The notes beneath the pieces are model-generated. The model did no database searches. It had not been told where the DNA came from and saw nothing but the letters and a program-made list of their open reading frames with translations. Positions 14,743-22,247 of a DNA stretch of 64,000 nt are shown in pieces (the stretch's first letter is position 1; each line of letters opens with the position of its first letter). The stretch is from Dicyema japonicum (taxonomy: Eukaryota; Animalia; Dicyemida), in assembly GCA_011109175.1 (NCBI GenBank), contig RDEW01000006.1, positions 905,232 through 969,231 of the forward strand, written 5' to 3'. A program made the position numbers and the translations under genes.

Positions 14743-15250
14743 CTCAACCAGAGTCCTTTCCGTGGCTCACATCTTTTTGAGTTTGCTTCCAATGCTGGAG
14801 AGAAAGGCGTCCTTCTTCGCTCCCTCGATTCCAATTGTCTCCACAGCAATGGGGGTTAAATGGTATTGCTCTCCTAGAGATTGGTATTTACGGATCTTCT
14901 TGGCCTCTGCCTGTTCGGCTACGTCTACAAAAGAGAGCGTCACCGTCAGCGATCAGGACCCTGAGAAGGTGTCCACACACATTGCTTCGAAGACGAGTGA
15001 TTTTCCGTTGGAGAATGGGAATAACGTCATGCCATCCGGCCTCTTCCCTTAGTTTCTGTCTAACCACAAACGTTCCAATTGGGCCGGAAATCCCGCGACC
15101 TTGAATTCTCGAGAGAGGATGTATTTGAATACTGCATGACTCGGGGCTCGACTAGCACTTCGTCCGCAAGTGAGTGGATGTAAGCCTTTTGTATGAACGT
15201 CCCCACCGCAACGGCATTTGTTGCTCGGTGTTTCTTCCGGATTTCTACGC
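14680..15250 (-). mobile_element. CRE-like 3' part (zinc knuckle plus restriction-like endonuclease)
   Basis: [53 protein letters not shown]. Confidence 0.8.
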
Positions 15251-15640
15251 ATTTCCGAATTGGGTGGGAATTTCTAACTTTTTTGGGGTAGTAAGTTTCC
15301 GGTTTTCCTCACTAATTCCTCAAATAGTTTAGGGTTTAGAGGTGTCTGGAAAAACCTTTACAGAGCCTTACTGGCAATTTTTTGGAATGTATTGATTTTT
15401 TCCATATTCGCGTCTGATCGTTTGGTTCCTCATGCAGCACACCCATAAGTTAGAGACGGTTGAATATACTGCACGTAGAGCAAGTCCAAATTTGAGTTGA
15501 AACACCCCTTATATTGTCCAAGGAGTGTTTTAACAAAATTTAGCTTTTGTTGTGCCGAGGAGATGACCGAATTGTTCTTGGGGATTGAGTTTCCATTTAT
15601 GGTTACACATGGAGCGGAGTTTGTCAATCTTCTGTTTGTT
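15250..15640 (-). mobile_element. Jockey/I-like LINE post-RT remnant
   Basis: LYVQYIQPSLTYGCAA motif. Confidence 0.5.
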
Positions 15641-15795
15641 GTGAAAATTGTTGTACAAGAGTTTACTCTCTTTTTGTAATTGTGCTCTATTTTTTATTTT
15701 ATTAACTATCGATTTTAAATAAATAAATTTAAGTTGTTTAATAAATCTAAATTATTATTTAAAAAGAAATTGTTAATAATGAGTTAGTATGATTT

Positions 15796-15984
15796 TTAAA
15801 ATCTAAAATACAAAACTAATACCAACCTTGGTTGAATGATGGTATTGTAATATTCCACATATTTTTTAAGAAAAGTCACTATATCTCTGAGTGAATTGGA
15901 TTCACTGGGGAATTTAGGGGGTGTTATGAACGATAAAATTATTGGATTTAAGAAAATAGCCAACAAAACCACAAACTTAAACAT
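15796..15984 (-). CDS. NPF: Neuropeptide F/Y-like precursor, 54 aa; exons 15984-15827 and 15802-15796
   Basis: Signal peptide MFKFVVLLAIFLNPIILS then 36-aa FITPPKFPSESNSLRDIVTFLKKYVEYYNTIIQPRF; 24-nt GT-AG intron splits the Arg35 codon AG|A. Confidence 0.82.
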   Translation of the reverse strand: MFKFVVLLAIFLNPIILSFITPPKFPSESNSLRDIVTFLKKYVEYYNTIIQPRLVLVLYFRF

Positions 15985-16725
15985 TCGCAGAGTACTGATA
16001 ATTCTATTATATATCGAAAATACACGACACTTTGTATTGAGGTTACTAAAATTATATACAAAACATGTAATTAATATGGATTTTTTAATGAGGTATCTTA
16101 TTATTACCCTCAGTCCACTCAAGTGAAGAAATAACAAGGTTTCGTGGTCACTACCAAGAAAATATTTGGTAGTTGATTAGTAAAGGAGGTTGGATCTGTG
16201 GTAACTAATCCTGTGATCCTGACGGGTTCCAGTAGAACCTGATTCAAACACAGTGATCCAGTCATTTTCTGGGAAGCTGAGGTCGATGTCAGAACTCGTC
16301 GCCGAGGAGCGAAATAGTCTCCCGGTGGAATGAAGAGATAGATCCTTTTGAATGCCGATCTATTTTTGGTGTCTCCACTAAAAGTAAAGAATATCCCATA
16401 TTTACCATTAATGTTTCACGTGGTGCCTCACGTGCAACGTTAGTGTGTCCAATGTGGCTACTTGGGTAAAGATATCTTTTGCTTTTTTCTGTTCCTTCTA
16501 TTTTTTGTTCTCCTAGAGTGGCTTCATGTGTTCCGCCTGTCTCAGGTGGCGCCCATTGGAAAAAAATCATTTCCTCCCCCATTCCATTGGAGGGGTTCTT
16601 ATGACTACAAGGACTAGACGTTTTTTTCCCTTTCTGTTAATTCTGGGTGGACTTTTGTAACACTGGAGGATTTTCTGCTTTTATCGTGGGGACTTTCTCG
16701 GCGTATCCGGGATTAATAAATTAAA

Positions 16726-17300
16726 TTAAAGCGTTCTATCAGCACCCTCAGTTTGGGACAGTAATCCACTCTTGAGCCTACACAAACACGCACTTGGTGG
16801 TGAACTACCGGATAGAACAGACATTTTATGCATATTGGCATTAGGCCTTTCTTTTCGGAAATCCAGTGTTTCATCATCTGTATGCTCTCTCAGTGTTCTT
16901 GCAATTGGTTCAAGAGATGATAGGGCTCTAGGAAACACATGCACTTCTGGCTCGATGTACTGTTTGTATATAGAATTCAGGACACGGTGGTTTTTCATCC
17001 TCCATAATCCTGAAAGACTTTCTGAAGGTTAGACTTTTCTGAAGGTCACTTCTTCTCACACTTGATTATCACGTTAAGAAGTGAAAGAAAATCTTACGTG
17101 CATGTCTAACTTGATTAAATAAATGGGATTTCAGTGTTACCAACATTTAGCTCCACCTCTGTTTGCTTAGTTTTCTGTAGGGGGTGAATAAAGTAGTGAC
17201 TGATTTCTCAGGCTAATTGATAGGTTGTCCTCTAACCAAACACTTGGAATCTTGATGCGGTACTTAGGATTGATCCTGGGATGTGATTTGGAAAAAGTCG
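16726..17300 (-). mobile_element. Jockey/I-like LINE 3' remnant
   Basis: HRVLNSIYKQYIEP motif; 17140-17260 is homologous to 57440-57560. Confidence 0.5.
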
Positions 17301-18537
17301 TGATGCCGATCTTAAATTGCCAAAACAAACACGTCTCCTCCTATCGCTAAGAAATTTATCTAGCCGAGTTTAAATTTTCAGATTTACATATTTTCCAAGT
17401 TAGGGTTCTCTTAGGATGAGTCGAACGCTTTATGGATATCCACGGAACAGAGGACACTCTACATAAGTCTGGGTATGTTTTGGAATTCAATGCGGATGAA
17501 ATGACTTTCCCAAGGCAGCCGACCAAATCCTTACGAAATGACTCCAGAAGTTGAATGTCTCCAAGGCAATTGTTGTGATGAACTCGTACCCAGTAGAGGA
17601 TTGCATATGACTCCGCTATATAATATCCTTGTACTTCTGGAGGTATGCACTCTGAGTCGTCGTTGGACAATATCAGCTCCTTACACGTGAAGACTCTAAG
17701 TATTTTATTGAGTCATTAAAAACATTGCTGGCTGTTAGCGAAACGAACTGCGAAGCGTAAGCCTGCGTAGGGCACGCAGGCTTTAGTGCGGTGTGAGCGA
17801 AGTAAACTGCAGAGCTGGTAGTTGATATAATTCAAACTATCGATTTAATTAATACAGCGTCCTCTCAAAGGAGGAGACCGTCGTGGCTTTTAGGTGTAGC
17901 CAGACATTAAAGTTTTTTAAGATAATAAAGTGATTTCCCACCCACTTATGCCTCCAGTTACACTCTCGCATAGCGTGCTTGTCACACTCTCGACGATGCT
18001 TTTTAGAGTAAAAGGGAGTCGATTCATGTTCCAACCTATACCAATGGCTCCTCCTCTTCGATTTGGTAGGGTCGTTAAATAGTAATTGTAGTATTAACAA
18101 AATAATCTTGTGTGAATATCACGTAATTATCATATTAAGACGAAATTTGATATTTCAAGATTTTATCGTCATTAAAATGTAAACTATTCCTATTTAACTG
18201 ACAGTAAAGCTATTTAAACCACGTGTCAATAATTCCAAAACACAAACATAGAACCTGCCTGTGTGCTTCATGTAGTTGATTAAAACTTGAAAATTATGAG
18301 ACTACTATAGAGAATTATTGACCTCCTTAATTTGGGTGCAACCCACTTACATGAGTAATATCTGGAAGTGCCTTGCTTTGAAACCATAAAGACATCAGTC
18401 ATACCTTATTTGTGCCACATAAGTGAAGAATCGATTGTATACCAACAAAAAAGTATAGATGAGAAAATGAATACCAAATAGTGTACATAATAGGAAATAA
18501 AATAAATATAATTGTCACATTACAGTAAGAGCTAAAA

Positions 18538-20663
18538 TTACGTTGAAGATCGATGAGAAGGGTCAACATCCTTACAATCAATTGATGATTTATCACCTAT
18601 TAGTATAATTAATCATAAACCTGGTTCCCTTACTTGAGTAATTTCAACCTTAATGGGAATCTGCGGTATAGCAATAGGACGAATATTCCCTTGAGGAAAT
18701 CTGTTAATCACACCAAATTCTGGTGTTTGTTTAACGTGGGCTATAGGAGGTCCAGTTGGATGCATATAATATCGAGGCATCTGATCATTCGGATTTATCA
18801 TCTGACCTTGAACATATCCCCCAAGTTGGTGTTGATGTCGCATTTGAAATGCGTAGTTCCCCTGAGGAGTGGCTATCATCGGAATTGCTCCCTGGAACGG
18901 AGTGCCAGAGTACGGATTTTGAAATAGTTGGATATGCTGTCCATGTTGGAAGACATGTCCCTGGGGGATGATGTTGACTGGTCCAGAAATGGAAATATCA
19001 CTTCCATGAGGTTTTTGATTAGCAGGTAAGATTGGACGAAATTGGTCATAATTCTCGGCAATAAAGACAGCAGGCGGCATCTGAGTCTGCTGTTGGGACG
19101 AAACCACATTGGTGTCGTAGAGATGTCCCATAAACTGTTGTGACTGACTCAAAATTGGAGACTGTTGGATAGGTTGGGGATCAACGATTGGGGAAGAACA
19201 AAACCCAGTATCCTTCCTCGACTAAATATAATAAATCAATCAAATAATTAGCAAAACCGCAATAATCGAACTACGCTAATTATCGATTAGTAGTCAAGGA
19301 TATCGCATTCTACTAAACGCAACGTCAACAAAGAATTAAACAACCTTTTCTCTCAAAAAGAGACATTTCCTATGAATGCACGTCTGCTTTAGAACTTTTC
19401 TGTTTAAACAGTTCTTGCATTTCATACAATTCTCTTTAATCTGACATGGCATGCATTGACCGCAGCGTTTACGACGGTGCACTTTCGGAGTACTAAAGTC
19501 ACCTCCGAATTGTCCTGATGACAACGAGGGAACGACGACAGGGGAACTGTTCGGAAATTGAGTATGATTCTCCATAACTTTCGCACTTTGATTGAAAACA
19601 TCTTCAGAACTCAATGGGCCGTTCCGTGGAGGGAAAGTGGTTCCTGCGTTGGTGGGAAGTCTGGCGAAAACAATATTATGTCTTGGAATCTCAGAATTGT
19701 AAGACTTTTGTAAGGTCGATGGGTTCATTATCATTATGGGTCCCTGAATTGGGTTACCGGGGATCTGGTATGTTGGGTGAGGTTGCACAGCAGGGAGAGG
19801 GATCGCAGGACTTACGCCTGCTCCATTAGTGATCAAAAGAGGATCCGAACACTGAGTAGTGGTGGAAGGATTGATTTTGAAGGAAACTCTGCTGCCTTGG
19901 AAACTAAGTTCACTCTGCTTGTTGAGGAGACTTGAAGATTTAAGGACTTCCGAAGATTCCGGAAATGACTTTGCGTTGTAGTTACGGCTATAAGAACCAG
20001 ATGACGTGGAATCTGAACGTTTCACCATCTTTGGAATGAGTGGGCGGTGGGAAACAATTATCTTCTCAGGGACATTCACCTCTTCCTCGATTTCGGCATA
20101 TTTACAGGAATCTTCCAAAAGGGAATTCACTGCTTGTTCTATTTCGTCCGAGGATGAAATATGAGGTTCTTCTGGTTCTTCAATTTTCACGTCCTCTGGT
20201 TGTTCCGGTAGAGAGACGATAGGTACGGTCTTCAGTAGCTTTTCTGGGCTCTCTGGACTCTTTTTTCTGACACAATTCTTATTTTCGGACCTTTTTCTCC
20301 TGCTAGAACCATCTGTCGCAGAATTTGAAGAGGCAGGCTAAATGATAAAGCGATAATTTAGATAATTTAAATCATTTTGAGCACAAAATAGCATAAAATA
20401 TCGCAAAAGAAAACCTTGTGGTGAAGAAAGTGGCAACGCCTAAGAATGCAAGTTTGTTTGAGGATTTTTCTGTTTATGCAATTCTTACATGTGTTGCAAT
20501 TCTCCTTGATTTTGCATGCATCACAGTTTCCACATCTTTTACGGCGATTAACTTTGGTAAAATCAGCAGGCGCCTGTGGGATGATGGCTTGATTGATTGG
20601 GAGTCCTGGAAATTGGCCTTCCATCTCCCGTTTAAATTTGCCAGTGCTTTCAGGACTTGACAT
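18538..20663 (-). CDS. Protein with two TET/IDAX-type zf-CXXC fingers and a Q/P-rich C-terminus; exons 20663-20415, 20337-19345, 19221-18621, 18596-18538
   Basis: RRKRCGNCDACKIKENCNTCKNCINRKILKQTCILRRC and RRKRCGQCMPCQIKENCMKCKNCLNRKVLKQTCIHRKC; in-frame splicing via GT-AG introns of 77, 123 and 24 nt; start codon not certain. Confidence 0.85.
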
Positions 20664-22247
20664 AATAATCTATAAATAATATCCACAAGTGTAAATTTAA
20701 AGAGATATTTTAATTAAAAAACATTAAAAACATACAAGTAAAAGTTATAACAAGAAAGCTTCTATAAAACGTCTATTCCAAATAGTATGTGGTTTAACTA
20801 TTTGAATAAATAATTAAAAATTAATATTAATTAATATTTATTTATAAAATAAGTGTGTTATTTATATTTTTCTAATAAGCATCGATAACCTCACCCAAAT
20901 ATCTGTCATTCAATCGCAGTCAGGTTCAAACGAGGCCCAATTACTACAAAAAGGGAGCCCCGTCGGTTTTCTCCGTATACACTTCCGGAAACATTTTGGA
21001 AACCGTCTGAGTCATCATAATGCAGGAGAAAGATGTGGGAATGTAAAAATAGCAGTCATCTAAACTGTCGATCATTATTTCAGTGTTTTTGCGGTTTAGT
21101 ATATTAAATTGGCTTTCTTCCTTCCGATCAGTGTTGCAATTTTAATTTATTCCAAATTGAATTCTTAGGCAATTACCCATTTTGCGGAAACCATTCATTT
21201 TCGTTGATTGACTCATCTCTGGTTATTTCTGTCTTTCTCGTACTCAGTCTGTCTAATGAAAGAAACTAATAGAAACGACAATAGGGAGTACGGCGTAGGG
21301 GAACTTCTAAGTATTCATATGCTTATAAGAACCCCTGAAGTGGTTTCAACCAACTACCAATTAGTTTAAAAGATCACTTTAATTGTTTGAACATAAGACC
21401 AGATATGACCCCATATAATTTGCCAGGAAAGTTAAAACTGACTTCCTGGTCATTCCGCATAATTAATTTGGTTTATAAAATTTGAAAAATTTTAATCTCA
21501 AAGCGGTTATAACGGTGTTACTGACCTCCAATTATTGCTTGGTCAACTCCTTTCCGCATGTTTGGTTTTTTCGACTTACATAAATAACTCAAAGTGATTA
21601 GAATCCTTTGTCCATGTTTTTCGTTGTGGTACCGTCATATCTGCTGTATTTAAGGAATCTGGAGTTAGGCAAGGCCACAAATATATTGGAAGGTTGTACC
21701 TTTCTACCTCAAATAACTTGCACTCCCTGTCTGCCATGATGAACGATGTTGCTTGCTCTTCAGAAAGAATGAGTATACCTTACGCATCAGTCTTCTAATA
21801 AATTTTAGTTTTTGTAATTATCTATGCGTTCTATTTTCGATTCAATGCCTTGATTGAGATCAGGTGGTCTTTGGAGACTTGCTTTTATTCCTTTATCCGA
21901 GTTATTCCAATTCGAACCCAGACATTGGTGTATTGGATGCTTCCTCATTTCAAAACTTCGAGTTTCCGACGTCTCCCAAATTCATTAAGAAAGGGAGGAG
22001 AGGTACATCCACCATGATGAGTAGAAAAGTGCGCTAAATCTATATCATAGTGCATCAGAGTAGCGTCACCAACTCAACCAATTAACTTGTTTGATAGCCT
22101 TTGACTGAAAATGTAAATTAGACAATGACTGTGCTTAAAGCGATCTTTTTCTTCAAAAGTCAATTTGATTGATCATACGAACTCTTTCCCCCAGAACTTT
22201 AAAGATGCTGAAGCAAATACGATTTTCACTGTAAAGATATAAACTAG

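What the first reader, a model, noticed from the sequence alone, without database searches (positions are those of the whole stretch)
15796..15984. Hidden NPF/NPY neuropeptide gene in a probably nerveless, micro-intron animal
Seen: a minus-strand ATG at 15984 gives an 18-aa hydrophobic signal followed by exactly 36 residues, FITPPKFPSESNSLRDIVTFLKKYVEYYNTIIQPRF, once a 24-nt GT-AG intron (15803-15826) is removed. Known: NPY peptides are 36 aa with P5, P8, aromatic 20, Y27, R35 and aromatic 36, and NPY/NPF genes carry a phase-2 intron inside the penultimate Arg codon. All of these are met. The TPP..P...(F/Y)LK..EYY....PRF spacing is collinear with molluscan NPF as I recall it. Inference: if the host is a dicyemid, which lacks neurons, this is a retained bilaterian neuropeptide ligand that the ORF track masks inside a longer reading frame.
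Basis: partly seen in the sequence, partly recalled or inferred. Interest (0 to 1): 0.85.

Follow-up and report, generated by a model that had tools for sequence, protein, structure and literature searches.

The report
Diverged NPF-type peptide gene in dicyemid
A tiny, apparently unannotated two-exon gene in this neuron-less octopus parasite descends from the NPY/NPF appetite-hormone family and keeps the family's hallmark intron (shrunk to 24 bases), but it has lost the signals that normally make the peptide active, so whether it still works is open.

Summary
Minus-strand ATG 15984, exon to 15827, a 24-nt GT-AG intron (15826-15803), then A-TTT-TAA give a 54-aa prepropeptide: an 18-aa hydrophobic leader plus 36 residues ending PRF-stop.

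The resemblance to NPY/NPF is far beyond chance.
- It aligns without gaps to snail NPY precursors (30 bits, 35% identity).
- It scores 22 bits on a protostome NPF profile, against 6 bits for the next window ORF.
- The putative intron splits the penultimate Arg codon as AG|A, as I verified in the Lymnaea NPY gene.
- The predicted fold is a PP-fold.
- Estimated genome-wide chance expectation for sequence plus intron is about 1e-5.

It fails several defining features of an active NPF. There is no Gly-dibasic amidation site, Gln replaces the invariant Arg33, there is no C-terminal flanking peptide, and it falls below Pfam's cut-off.

RNA evidence is thin. One low-depth transcriptome contig covers codons 1-38 only, and the splice junction is unobserved.

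Verdict: a true NPF-family descendant (about 0.9). About half the odds favour a still-functional, non-amidated secreted peptide and about a third a recent relic. I found no prior report. Another first-stage note of this scan on the same stretch (s1-371786) already flagged the missing amidation site and Gln33.

The parts
15931..15984 (-). Start codon and 18-residue leader (M-F-K, then a hydrophobic core, then N-P-I-I-L-S). Inferred signal peptide with cleavage after Ser18.
   Evidence: Sequence. It aligns with the M-x-K plus hydrophobic leaders of ten mollusc NPF precursors. AF2 predicts a helix over residues 2-20. The cleavage site is inferred from the -3/-1 rule; no SignalP was available.
15827..15930 (-). 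Exon part encoding peptide residues 1-34 plus the first two bases (AG) of the Arg35 codon.
   Evidence: Ungapped alignment to Biomphalaria and Lymnaea NPY precursors. Profile hits. AF2 gives an extended N-terminus and a helix over 14-32 at pLDDT 84.7. The top PDB fold matches are nearly all PP-fold peptides and miniproteins.
15803..15826 (-). Putative 24-nt spliceosomal micro-intron, phase 2, inside the Arg35 codon (AAG|GTTGGT...TTTTAG|A).
   Evidence: Sequence. It has the same donor (AG|GTT) and acceptor (T-rich, then TAG) as three RNA-verified introns of the neighbouring gene, one of them also 24 nt. It has the same position and phase as the Lymnaea NPY intron and as reported for the family (PMC7314547). 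Splicing itself was not observed.
15796..15802 (-). Second coding exon: the last base of Arg35, Phe36 (TTT) and stop (TAA). No Gly-Lys-Arg follows. The codon after the stop is AAA.
   Evidence: One search found no downstream acceptor within 12 kb that gives F/Y-Gly-dibasic.
15693..15703 (-). Two overlapping AATAAA hexamers about 95 nt after the stop; a possible poly(A) signal.
   Evidence: Read. This is weak evidence in AT-rich DNA.
15747..15748 (-). Alternative AG acceptor (80-nt intron) that would give Arg-Phe followed by about 70 further residues with no Gly or dibasic site.
   Evidence: A TACTAAC motif lies upstream of it. There is no RNA evidence for it.
15871..16838 (.). Stretch covered by a low-depth (5x) contig of transcriptome run X5. 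It includes codons 1-38 and about 850 nt upstream. Orientation is unknown.
   Evidence: record 25. X5 is RNA because its contig for the neighbouring CXXC gene lacks three GT-AG introns that the DNA runs contain.
15000..15664 (-). Very high-copy repeat flanking the gene's 3' side, probably the tail of a non-LTR retrotransposon.
   Evidence: DNA word depth reaches 467,000 against about 340 for single-copy DNA. Atlas feature hits go to ALKBH8_N and RVT_1 clusters. No Pfam hit.

Best explanation
This is a genuine, highly diverged descendant of the bilaterian NPY/NPF gene in a dicyemid genome (by earlier notes and genome features, Dicyema japonicum). Shown: it keeps the family's gene plan. A leader peptide is followed directly by a PP-fold peptide of about 36 residues, and the coding sequence is interrupted between the second and third base of the penultimate Arg codon. 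The candidate intron there is 24 nt. Inferred: the mRNA is spliced to give a 54-aa prepropeptide, signal peptidase releases a 36-aa peptide ending ...Q-P-R-F with a free carboxyl end, and no convertase, carboxypeptidase or amidating enzyme is needed or possible. I consider it more likely than not that the peptide is still made and acts as a secreted signal on a co-diverged receptor. Its fold-determining residues and open frame are intact, while the classical receptor-contact features (Arg33, C-terminal amide) have changed.
For: Pairwise similarity:
- BLASTP gives 29.6 bits (E 7e-8, 49 aa ungapped) to a Biomphalaria pro-NPY.
- It gives 30.4 bits (13/37 identical, ungapped to the terminal Phe) to Lymnaea NPY.
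- It keeps the same register as human NPY.

Family-level similarity:
- Pfam's only hit is Hormone_3, collinear over profile positions 3-35 of 36.
- A mollusc NPF HMM gives 22.6 bits, and a broad HMM built from 98 family representatives gives 22.3 bits. The next window ORF scores at most 6.1 bits. Splicing adds 3.5 bits.
- ESM Atlas nearest clusters are NPY, PP and NPF.

Intron:
- Its position and phase are identical to Lymnaea: CCC AG|gt...ag|A TTC there, CCA AG|gt...ag|A TTT here. This matches the family rule reported in PMC7314547.
- Its splice signals and length match RNA-verified local introns.

Structure: AF2 predicts a PP-fold at pLDDT 84.7, and the fold matches are aPP, PP, PYY and aPP-derived miniproteins.

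Locus:
- It is about single-copy in DNA runs (summed contig depth 540-690 against about 340 for the neighbouring gene) and is unique in the window.
- A transcriptome contig covers the 5' two-thirds of the ORF.

Context: Dicyema sp. keeps two rhodopsin-type GPCRs whose best matches are neuropeptide receptors (PMC6543705).
Against: No read or contig shows the spliced junction. The only RNA coverage has depth 5 (against 210 for the neighbouring gene), is unspliced over about 1.7 kb, has unknown strand, and stops at 15871. There is no Gly or dibasic site, so amidation is impossible. The amide, Arg33 and Arg35 are critical for vertebrate Y receptors (PMC3563083). Arg33 is R or K in 110 of 110 family sequences but Gln here. 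Four further near-invariant columns are also violated: R to F, F to S, L to Y and G to I. The Pfam score of 13 bits is below the 28.7-bit cut-off. No matching protein exists in the 5.8-billion-protein collection. A high-copy repeat begins about 130 nt past the stop.
Confidence: 0.55

Rival explanations
1. It is a recently inactivated relic of the NPF gene. The ancestral Gly codon after Phe became a stop, which removed amidation and the C-flanking peptide. Receptor-contact residues then drifted, and the low RNA signal is read-through or repeat-driven transcription.
For: The stop sits exactly where Gly stands in all complete precursors, and the next codon is AAA (Lys), as in F-G-K-R. Gln33, Ile32 and three other substitutions fall in near-invariant columns. 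A high-copy repeat lies just downstream and moderately repeated DNA upstream. RNA depth is only 5 and the transcript looks unspliced and long. The gene is absent from protein collections.
Against: The ATG, the 52-codon open frame, both splice sites, all PP-fold core positions and the gap-free alignment are intact despite about 65% divergence. Long neutral decay in 30-40% GC DNA would not leave this pattern. AF2 folds the peptide confidently from the single sequence. A stop directly after Phe still leaves the full peptide.
Confidence: 0.34
2. It is a chance resemblance: an AT-rich ORF that happens to look like NPF, with a fortuitous GT...AG.
For: The Pfam E-value is only 0.11. The peptide is short.
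Against: The window-level E-value is 1.2e-5 on two NPF profiles, with a gap of 16-17 bits to the next ORF. No score of 50 or more occurred in 32 Mb of simulated sequence. The intron configuration has frequency 6.5e-4 and the leader 2.5e-3, measured on the window itself. The joint genome-wide expectation is about 1e-5 or lower.
Confidence: 0.04
3. The gene is real but uses the 80-nt intron (acceptor at 15748/15747). That would make a longer precursor with a lysine-rich C-terminal extension after Arg-Phe instead of ending at Phe.
For: This acceptor also restores Arg-Phe in frame. It opens about 70 further codons and is preceded by a TACTAAC-like branch motif. The neighbouring gene has introns of 77 and 123 nt.
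Against: No Gly or dibasic site follows Phe in that frame. The extension runs into the high-copy repeat. The nearer T-rich acceptor fits the local consensus. There is no RNA support for it.
Confidence: 0.05
4. It is host (cephalopod) NPF DNA contaminating the assembly.
For: Dicyemids are collected from octopus kidneys, and cephalopods have NPF (PMC4208409).
Against: Identity to mollusc NPFs, which are tightly conserved among themselves, is only 29-35%. The 24-nt intron contrasts with 2,291 nt in Lymnaea. The locus lies on the same contig as a gene with an RNA-verified 24-nt intron, and its DNA depth is within about twofold of that gene's.
Confidence: 0.01

Closest known systems
Molluscan neuropeptide F / NPY precursors (Lymnaea stagnalis NPY, P0004; Biomphalaria pro-NPY-like, P0001)
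   Same: The leader starts M-x-K and is followed directly by the peptide. The spacing P-P-x-x-P ... (Y/F)-L-K ... E-Y-Y ... P-R-F aligns without gaps, with 35% identity over 37 residues. The phase-2 intron splits an AGA Arg codon as AG|A before the Phe codon.
   Different: The peptide is 36 residues rather than 39. Five near-invariant columns are changed, including Arg33 to Gln and Gly32 to Ile. A stop codon stands where the amidation Gly should be. There is no dibasic site and no C-flanking peptide. The intron is 24 nt, against 2,291 nt in Lymnaea.
Vertebrate NPY / PYY / pancreatic polypeptide (Pfam PF00159 Hormone_3; PP-fold)
   Same: Length is 36 residues with the same register: Pro5, Pro8, Glu10, Asp16, Tyr27, Asn29, Ile31 and Arg35 are identical to human NPY, with aromatic residues at 20 and 36. 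The predicted structure is a polyproline stretch followed by a helix over 14-32, and it matches aPP, PP and PYY structures.
   Different: It scores 13 bits against a gathering score of 28.7. It lacks Gly9, Ala12, Thr32 and Arg33, which are listed as conserved in PMC3563083, and it lacks the C-terminal amide.
PrRP / sNPF-type RFamide peptides
   Same: A C-terminal Arg-Phe, and a single peptide placed next to the signal peptide (as in PrRP-type precursors).
   Different: Those genes have a phase-1 intron in the N-terminal or central part of the peptide, not a phase-2 intron in the terminal Arg codon (PMC7314547). They also lack the N-terminal prolines and the Y/L/Y/I helix pattern. The intron therefore places this locus with NPY/NPF.
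Flatworm NPFs (for example Moniezia expansa NPF, the first invertebrate NPF)
   Same: They come from the spiralian lineage that Lu et al. consider closest to dicyemids (PMC6736024). They are long NPFs with a C-terminal RPRF (PMC6389622).
   Different: They were not compared residue by residue here because no tool-supplied flatworm sequence was available. They are amidated.

Membership tests
NPY/NPF gene family (descent) | A phase-2 intron between the 2nd and 3rd base of the codon for the Arg of the C-terminal RF/RY | tested here: met
   The candidate reads CCA AG|GT...AG|A TTT. Lymnaea NPY reads CCC AG|GT...AG|A TTC. The family rule is stated in PMC7314547. This is position and phase from DNA only; splicing was not seen in RNA.
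NPY/NPF gene family (descent) | A signal peptide immediately followed by a single peptide of 36-40 residues | tested here: met
   An 18-aa leader aligns with the mollusc leaders. AF2 gives a helix over residues 2-20. The cleavage site is inferred.
NPY/NPF gene family (descent) | N-terminal proline motif and the conserved aromatic/aliphatic helix pattern (Y, L, Y, I); PP-fold | tested here: met
   PP and P occupy columns that are 81-100% conserved. F replaces Y20; L21, Y27, Y28 and I31 are present; Leu24 is Tyr. A PP-fold is predicted and matches aPP, PP and PYY.
NPY/NPF gene family (descent) | Significant match to a family profile | tested here: inconclusive
   Pfam Hormone_3 gives 13 bits against a cut-off of 28.7. 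Protostome NPF HMMs built here give 22.3-22.6 bits, E 1.2e-5 per window and about 0.01 per genome.
Active NPF/NPY peptide (functional definition) | C-terminal R-x-R-F/Y motif | tested here: not met
   The motif here is Q-P-R-F. The Arg33 column is R (98%) or K (2%) in 110 family sequences.
Active NPF/NPY peptide (functional definition) | Gly plus a mono- or dibasic site after F/Y, for cleavage and C-terminal amidation | tested here: not met
   TAA follows the Phe codon. No alternative exon supplies F/Y-G-K/R-R within 12 kb. Complete mollusc precursors all have RFG(K/R).
Active NPF/NPY peptide (functional definition) | C-terminal flanking peptide (CPON-like), usually with a further intron | tested here: not met
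   The precursor ends at Phe36.
Active NPF/NPY peptide (functional definition) | Expressed and spliced mRNA; peptide produced | tested here: inconclusive
   A transcriptome contig at depth 5 covers 15871-16838 only. Nothing covers 15788-15870.
Active NPF/NPY peptide (functional definition) | A cognate NPFR/NPYR-type receptor in the same genome | not testable with these tools
   Only a 64-kb window is available. The literature reports two rhodopsin-type GPCRs in Dicyema sp. with neuropeptide-receptor-like best hits (PMC6543705).

The most novel reading that the evidence does not exclude
A neuron-less, roughly 30-cell bilaterian still uses an NPF-derived signal, but in a stripped-down form. The 54-aa precursor needs only signal peptidase (no convertase, carboxypeptidase or amidating enzyme). 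It yields a free-acid PP-fold peptide that acts on one of the animal's two remaining rhodopsin-type GPCRs, or possibly on the cephalopod host. This would be a natural example of a non-amidated NPY-family ligand and of peptidergic signalling surviving loss of the nervous system.
Probability: 0.35. Interest if true: 0.8.

Novelty: new variant of a known kind. Interest (0 to 1): 0.68.

Why it matters
Dicyemids are secondarily simplified spiralians with no recognised neurons, about 5,000 genes and only a couple of rhodopsin-type GPCRs. Which bilaterian signalling systems survived that reduction is an open question. Previous evidence for neuropeptides there is antibody staining only (PMC6854800). 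A locus that is demonstrably NPY/NPF-derived gives a concrete, testable ligand candidate, with the 550-million-year-old intron position kept inside a 24-nt micro-intron. It is also a rare natural test of whether the C-terminal amide and Arg33 are dispensable when ligand and receptor co-evolve. Finally, it shows that gene models and ORF tracks miss such tiny genes: nothing matching it exists in the large protein collections searched.

Tried and rejected
- The search for homologous proteins with the unspliced ATG-ORF found no protein sharing words. The look-up of encoding contigs with the 113-aa ORF found nothing on record. No public gene call or Logan ORF could therefore be used to test splicing.
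- phmmer of the 36-mer against PDB sequences gave only a spurious GST-like hit.
- A first attempt to fetch NPFs with the 39-aa Lymnaea peptide was too short. The corrected query returned only one protein because of the length window.
- I spent look-up of sequencing runs with kind 'any', so no dedicated RNA search was possible. The single read-laying run showed the junction region uncovered in the one RNA run.
- I looked for a downstream exon encoding F/Y-Gly-dibasic. There is none within 12 kb.
- Pfam on the flanking ORFs gave nothing useful.
- Supplements and text of the two dicyemid genome papers were searched for 7tm_1, Hormone_3 and amidating enzymes. Nothing is held.
- The scan's notes hold nothing on an NPF receptor, amidating enzyme or rhodopsin GPCR in this genome.
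- Rejected readings: host contamination and chance (see rivals).
- The TATA-like box at 16013-16006 lies too close to the ATG to be read confidently as the promoter.
- I did not confirm the organism's name myself. It rests on earlier notes plus GC content, micro-introns and run dates.

Full report
**1. What is in the sequence.** On the minus strand an ATG at 15984 opens a frame that runs to CCA AG at 15831-15827. The next bases are GTTGGT. Twenty-four bases on, TTTTAG (ending at 15803) is followed by A TTT TAA. Removing 15826-15803 gives a 54-residue product. It begins with an 18-residue leader: M-F-K, then nine hydrophobic residues, then N-P-I-I-L-S. The remaining 36 residues end Q-P-R-F-stop. 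The ORF listing shows only a 113-aa TTG-initiated ORF (15796-16137) that reads through the intron. The ATG at 15984 is the first ATG in that frame.

**2. Organism and locus context.** Earlier notes of this scan assign the genome to a dicyemid, most likely Dicyema japonicum. I did not verify the name. The window's GC content fits the published 36.7%, as does the micro-intron habit (PMC6736024: 67.5 Mb, 5,012 genes, mean intron 38 bp; PMC6543705: median 27 bp).

Read laying shows that run X5 is a transcriptome. Its 1,955-nt contig for the neighbouring zf-CXXC gene (Pfam hit) lacks three minus-strand GT-AG introns of 24, 123 and 77 nt that the DNA runs X1-X3 contain. All three introns read AG|GTT...(T/A)TAG. 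These are the signals of the candidate intron (AAG|GTTGGT...TTTTAG), and one has exactly its length.

DNA depth over 15788-16181 is about single-copy (summed contig depth 540-690, at most about twice the neighbouring gene's 340). The 3' flank at 15000-15787 is a very high-copy repeat (word depth up to 467,000 against about 340). The 5' flank at 16182-16772 is moderately repeated. The locus is unique within the window. The 3' repeat looks like a non-LTR retrotransposon tail by Atlas features only; Pfam is silent.

**3. Is the NPY/NPF resemblance real?**
- Pfam returns one family out of 24,736, Hormone_3. The match is collinear (residues 22-54 against profile positions 3-35 of 36) but sub-threshold: 13 bits, E 0.11, cut-off 28.7.
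- The ESM Atlas feature search, run without the last two residues, puts NPY, PP and arthropod NPF clusters on top at 0.89, which counts as a lead only.
- I obtained real family members through the tools: a Biomphalaria pro-NPY, ten mollusc precursors and 98 family representatives at 50% clustering or below.
- BLASTP gives 29.6 bits over 49 ungapped residues to Biomphalaria and 30.4 bits to Lymnaea NPY, with 13 of 37 identical, 59% positive, and no gaps up to the terminal Phe.
- Against human NPY (sequence from PMC8536682) the register is identical, residues 5 to 36 on 5 to 36, with 8 of 32 identical.
- In the multiple alignment the invariant columns shared by all mollusc precursors and the candidate are M, K, P-P, P, E, K, E-Y-Y, P and R.

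**4. Chance controls.**
- The ungapped BLOSUM62 score against the snail peptide is 57. The next best among 21,679 stop-free 36-mers of the window is 20.
- In 32 Mb of third-order-Markov DNA trained on the window the maximum was 47. The tail falls about fourfold per 5 units, which gives about 0.03 expected per 67.5-Mb genome.
- HMMs built from the mollusc set and from the broad set score the spliced product at 22.6 and 22.3 bits (E 1.2e-5 over the 2,067 sequences searched: the window's 2,066 ORFs plus the spliced product). The unspliced ORF scores 20.4 and 18.8 bits, and the best unrelated ORF 5.5-6.1 bits.
- Two further features were measured on the window itself. An Arg codon split AG|GT...AG|R followed by an F/Y codon, with an 18-60-nt intron, occurs at 6.5e-4 of positions. 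An ATG-started, stop-free hydrophobic leader occurs at 2.5e-3.
- The joint genome-wide expectation is 1e-5 or lower. Chance is excluded for practical purposes.

**5. The intron.** PMC7314547 states that NPY/NPF genes across phyla share an intron between the second and third base of the Arg codon of the terminal RF/RY. PrRP-type genes instead carry a phase-1 intron elsewhere, and sNPF-type genes show only limited similarity in exon/intron structure.

I checked the family side directly. In the Lymnaea NPY locus (L001) the exon ends AGA CCC AG|GTGAGT. The next exon begins, after TTTCAG, with A TTC GGA AAG AGA. The intron is 2,291 nt. The candidate has CAA CCA AG|GTTGGT and TTTTAG|A TTT TAA. Position, phase and even the AGA codon are the same.

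Many database 'proteins' of the family end at ...GRP(R) or read into junk there. One example is a Bulinus model ending GRPRLVL, the same read-through artefact as this window's ORF. This feature places the locus with NPY/NPF rather than with other RFamide genes.

**6. Structure.** AF2 from the single sequence gives, for the 52-aa exon product, a helix over 2-20 (the leader), a loop over 21-31 and a helix over 32-50. For the mature part alone it gives an extended N-terminus and a helix over 14-32, at pLDDT 84.7.

Foldseek against the PDB returns avian and bovine pancreatic polypeptide, receptor-bound PP, PYY and aPP-derived miniproteins among the best hits (TM 0.61-0.78, rmsd 1.5-2.5 Å). E-values are not significant because the peptide is tiny. 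This is not independent of the sequence similarity. It does show that the fold-determining positions are intact.

**7. What does not fit an active NPF.** The column census over 111 family segments shows five violations of near-invariant positions:

| Family column | Family residue | Candidate |
|---|---|---|
| after PP-x | R/K 95% | Phe |
| next conserved aromatic | F 96% | Ser |
| Leu24 | L 92% | Tyr |
| Gly32 | G 94% | Ile |
| Arg33 | R/K 100% | Gln |

The stop codon stands where every complete precursor has Gly followed by K/R. There can therefore be no amidation, and there is no C-flanking peptide. No downstream acceptor within 12 kb supplies F/Y-Gly-dibasic. An alternative acceptor at 15748/15747 (80-nt intron) would add a lysine-rich tail, again without Gly.

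For vertebrate Y receptors the amide and Arg33/Arg35 are critical (PMC3563083). Another note of this scan (s1-371786) had already flagged the missing GKR and Gln33, and I confirm both. The codon after the stop is AAA. This weakly hints that F-G-K-R became F-stop-K-S, but AAA is common in this DNA.

**8. Expression.** X5 has a depth-5 contig over 15871-16838 and another over 16817-17580. The neighbouring gene has depth 210, and coverage is zero over 17758-18348. The start codon and codons 1-38 therefore lie in transcribed sequence. Against this, the contig is long, unspliced and of unknown strand, and it stops before the intron. DNA contigs also break between 15827 and 15859, which suggests a polymorphism there that I could not read. 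Splicing is therefore untested.

**9. Interpretation.** Descent from the NPY/NPF gene is about 0.9 likely.

Whether it is alive is open. For function: the ATG, the 52-codon frame, both splice sites, the gap-free alignment and the PP-fold core have all survived about 65% divergence. Most of that divergence therefore accrued under constraint, and a stop directly after Phe still leaves the whole peptide. For a relic: the lesion at the Gly position, the lost Arg33, the repeat-rich surroundings and the feeble RNA signal.

I put a functional, non-amidated secreted peptide at about 0.55 and a recent relic at about 0.34. The remainder goes to an alternative 3' exon, chance or contamination.

By the rule that a failed defining feature bars membership, I call it an NPF-derived gene. 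It is a new, truncated and non-amidatable variant, not a canonical NPF.

**10. Novelty.** Full-text searches found no report of NPY/NPF in dicyemids. The nearest work is antibody staining for vasopressin/oxytocin-like material in infusoriform larvae and the note that Dicyema sp. keeps two rhodopsin-type GPCRs resembling neuropeptide receptors.

Noticed in passing
window 18518-20669 (minus strand): A zf-CXXC gene with three RNA-verified GT-AG introns of 24, 123 and 77 nt (about 18595-18619, 19222-19344 and 20338-20414). Depth is 210 in transcriptome run X5. It served as a local positive control for micro-intron splicing.
   Followed up: partly
window 15000-15787: An extremely high-copy repeat: summed DNA word depth up to about 467,000 against about 340 for single-copy DNA. 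It is also transcribed in X5. One ORF (15433-15627, minus strand) resembles ALKBH8_N/RVT_1-type retrotransposon tails by Atlas features only.
   Followed up: partly
window 16583-16670: An 88-nt segment present in the reference but absent from the X5 contig, with non-canonical ends (TC..GA). The DNA runs show other joints nearby (16616>16736, 16236>16306), and depth there is about 65x single-copy. It is probably a polymorphic small repeat insertion, not an intron.
   Followed up: no
window 15803-15826: The 24-nt intron is a multiple of three and has no stop codon. Intron retention would therefore keep the frame and give a 62-aa product that also ends in Arg-Phe-stop.
   Followed up: no
window, whole (for example 16417 and 16429): CACGTG occurs 18 times against 6.4 expected (0 of 100 shuffles reach 18). 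This agrees with the palindrome excess noted elsewhere in this genome. None lies within the NPF-like gene itself.
   Followed up: partly
L001 6194-6229 (Lymnaea stagnalis NPY locus): Seventeen bases into the conserved intron lies a near-duplicate of the exon end (encoding M-N-E-Y-Y-V-I-V-G-R-P-R), again followed by GTGAGT. This is a tandem duplicated exon end or a possible alternative donor.
   Followed up: no
proteins P0081, P0003: P0081 is a family representative with ...GRPRF-KR and no Gly, so non-amidatable NPF-like precursors may exist elsewhere. P0003 (Bulinus) is a gene model that reads through the conserved intron (GRPRLVL).
   Followed up: no
window 16006-16013 (minus strand): A TATATAAT box lies only 22-29 nt upstream of the ATG. 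If it is the promoter, the 5' UTR would be almost nil. This conflicts with the long upstream RNA contig.
   Followed up: no
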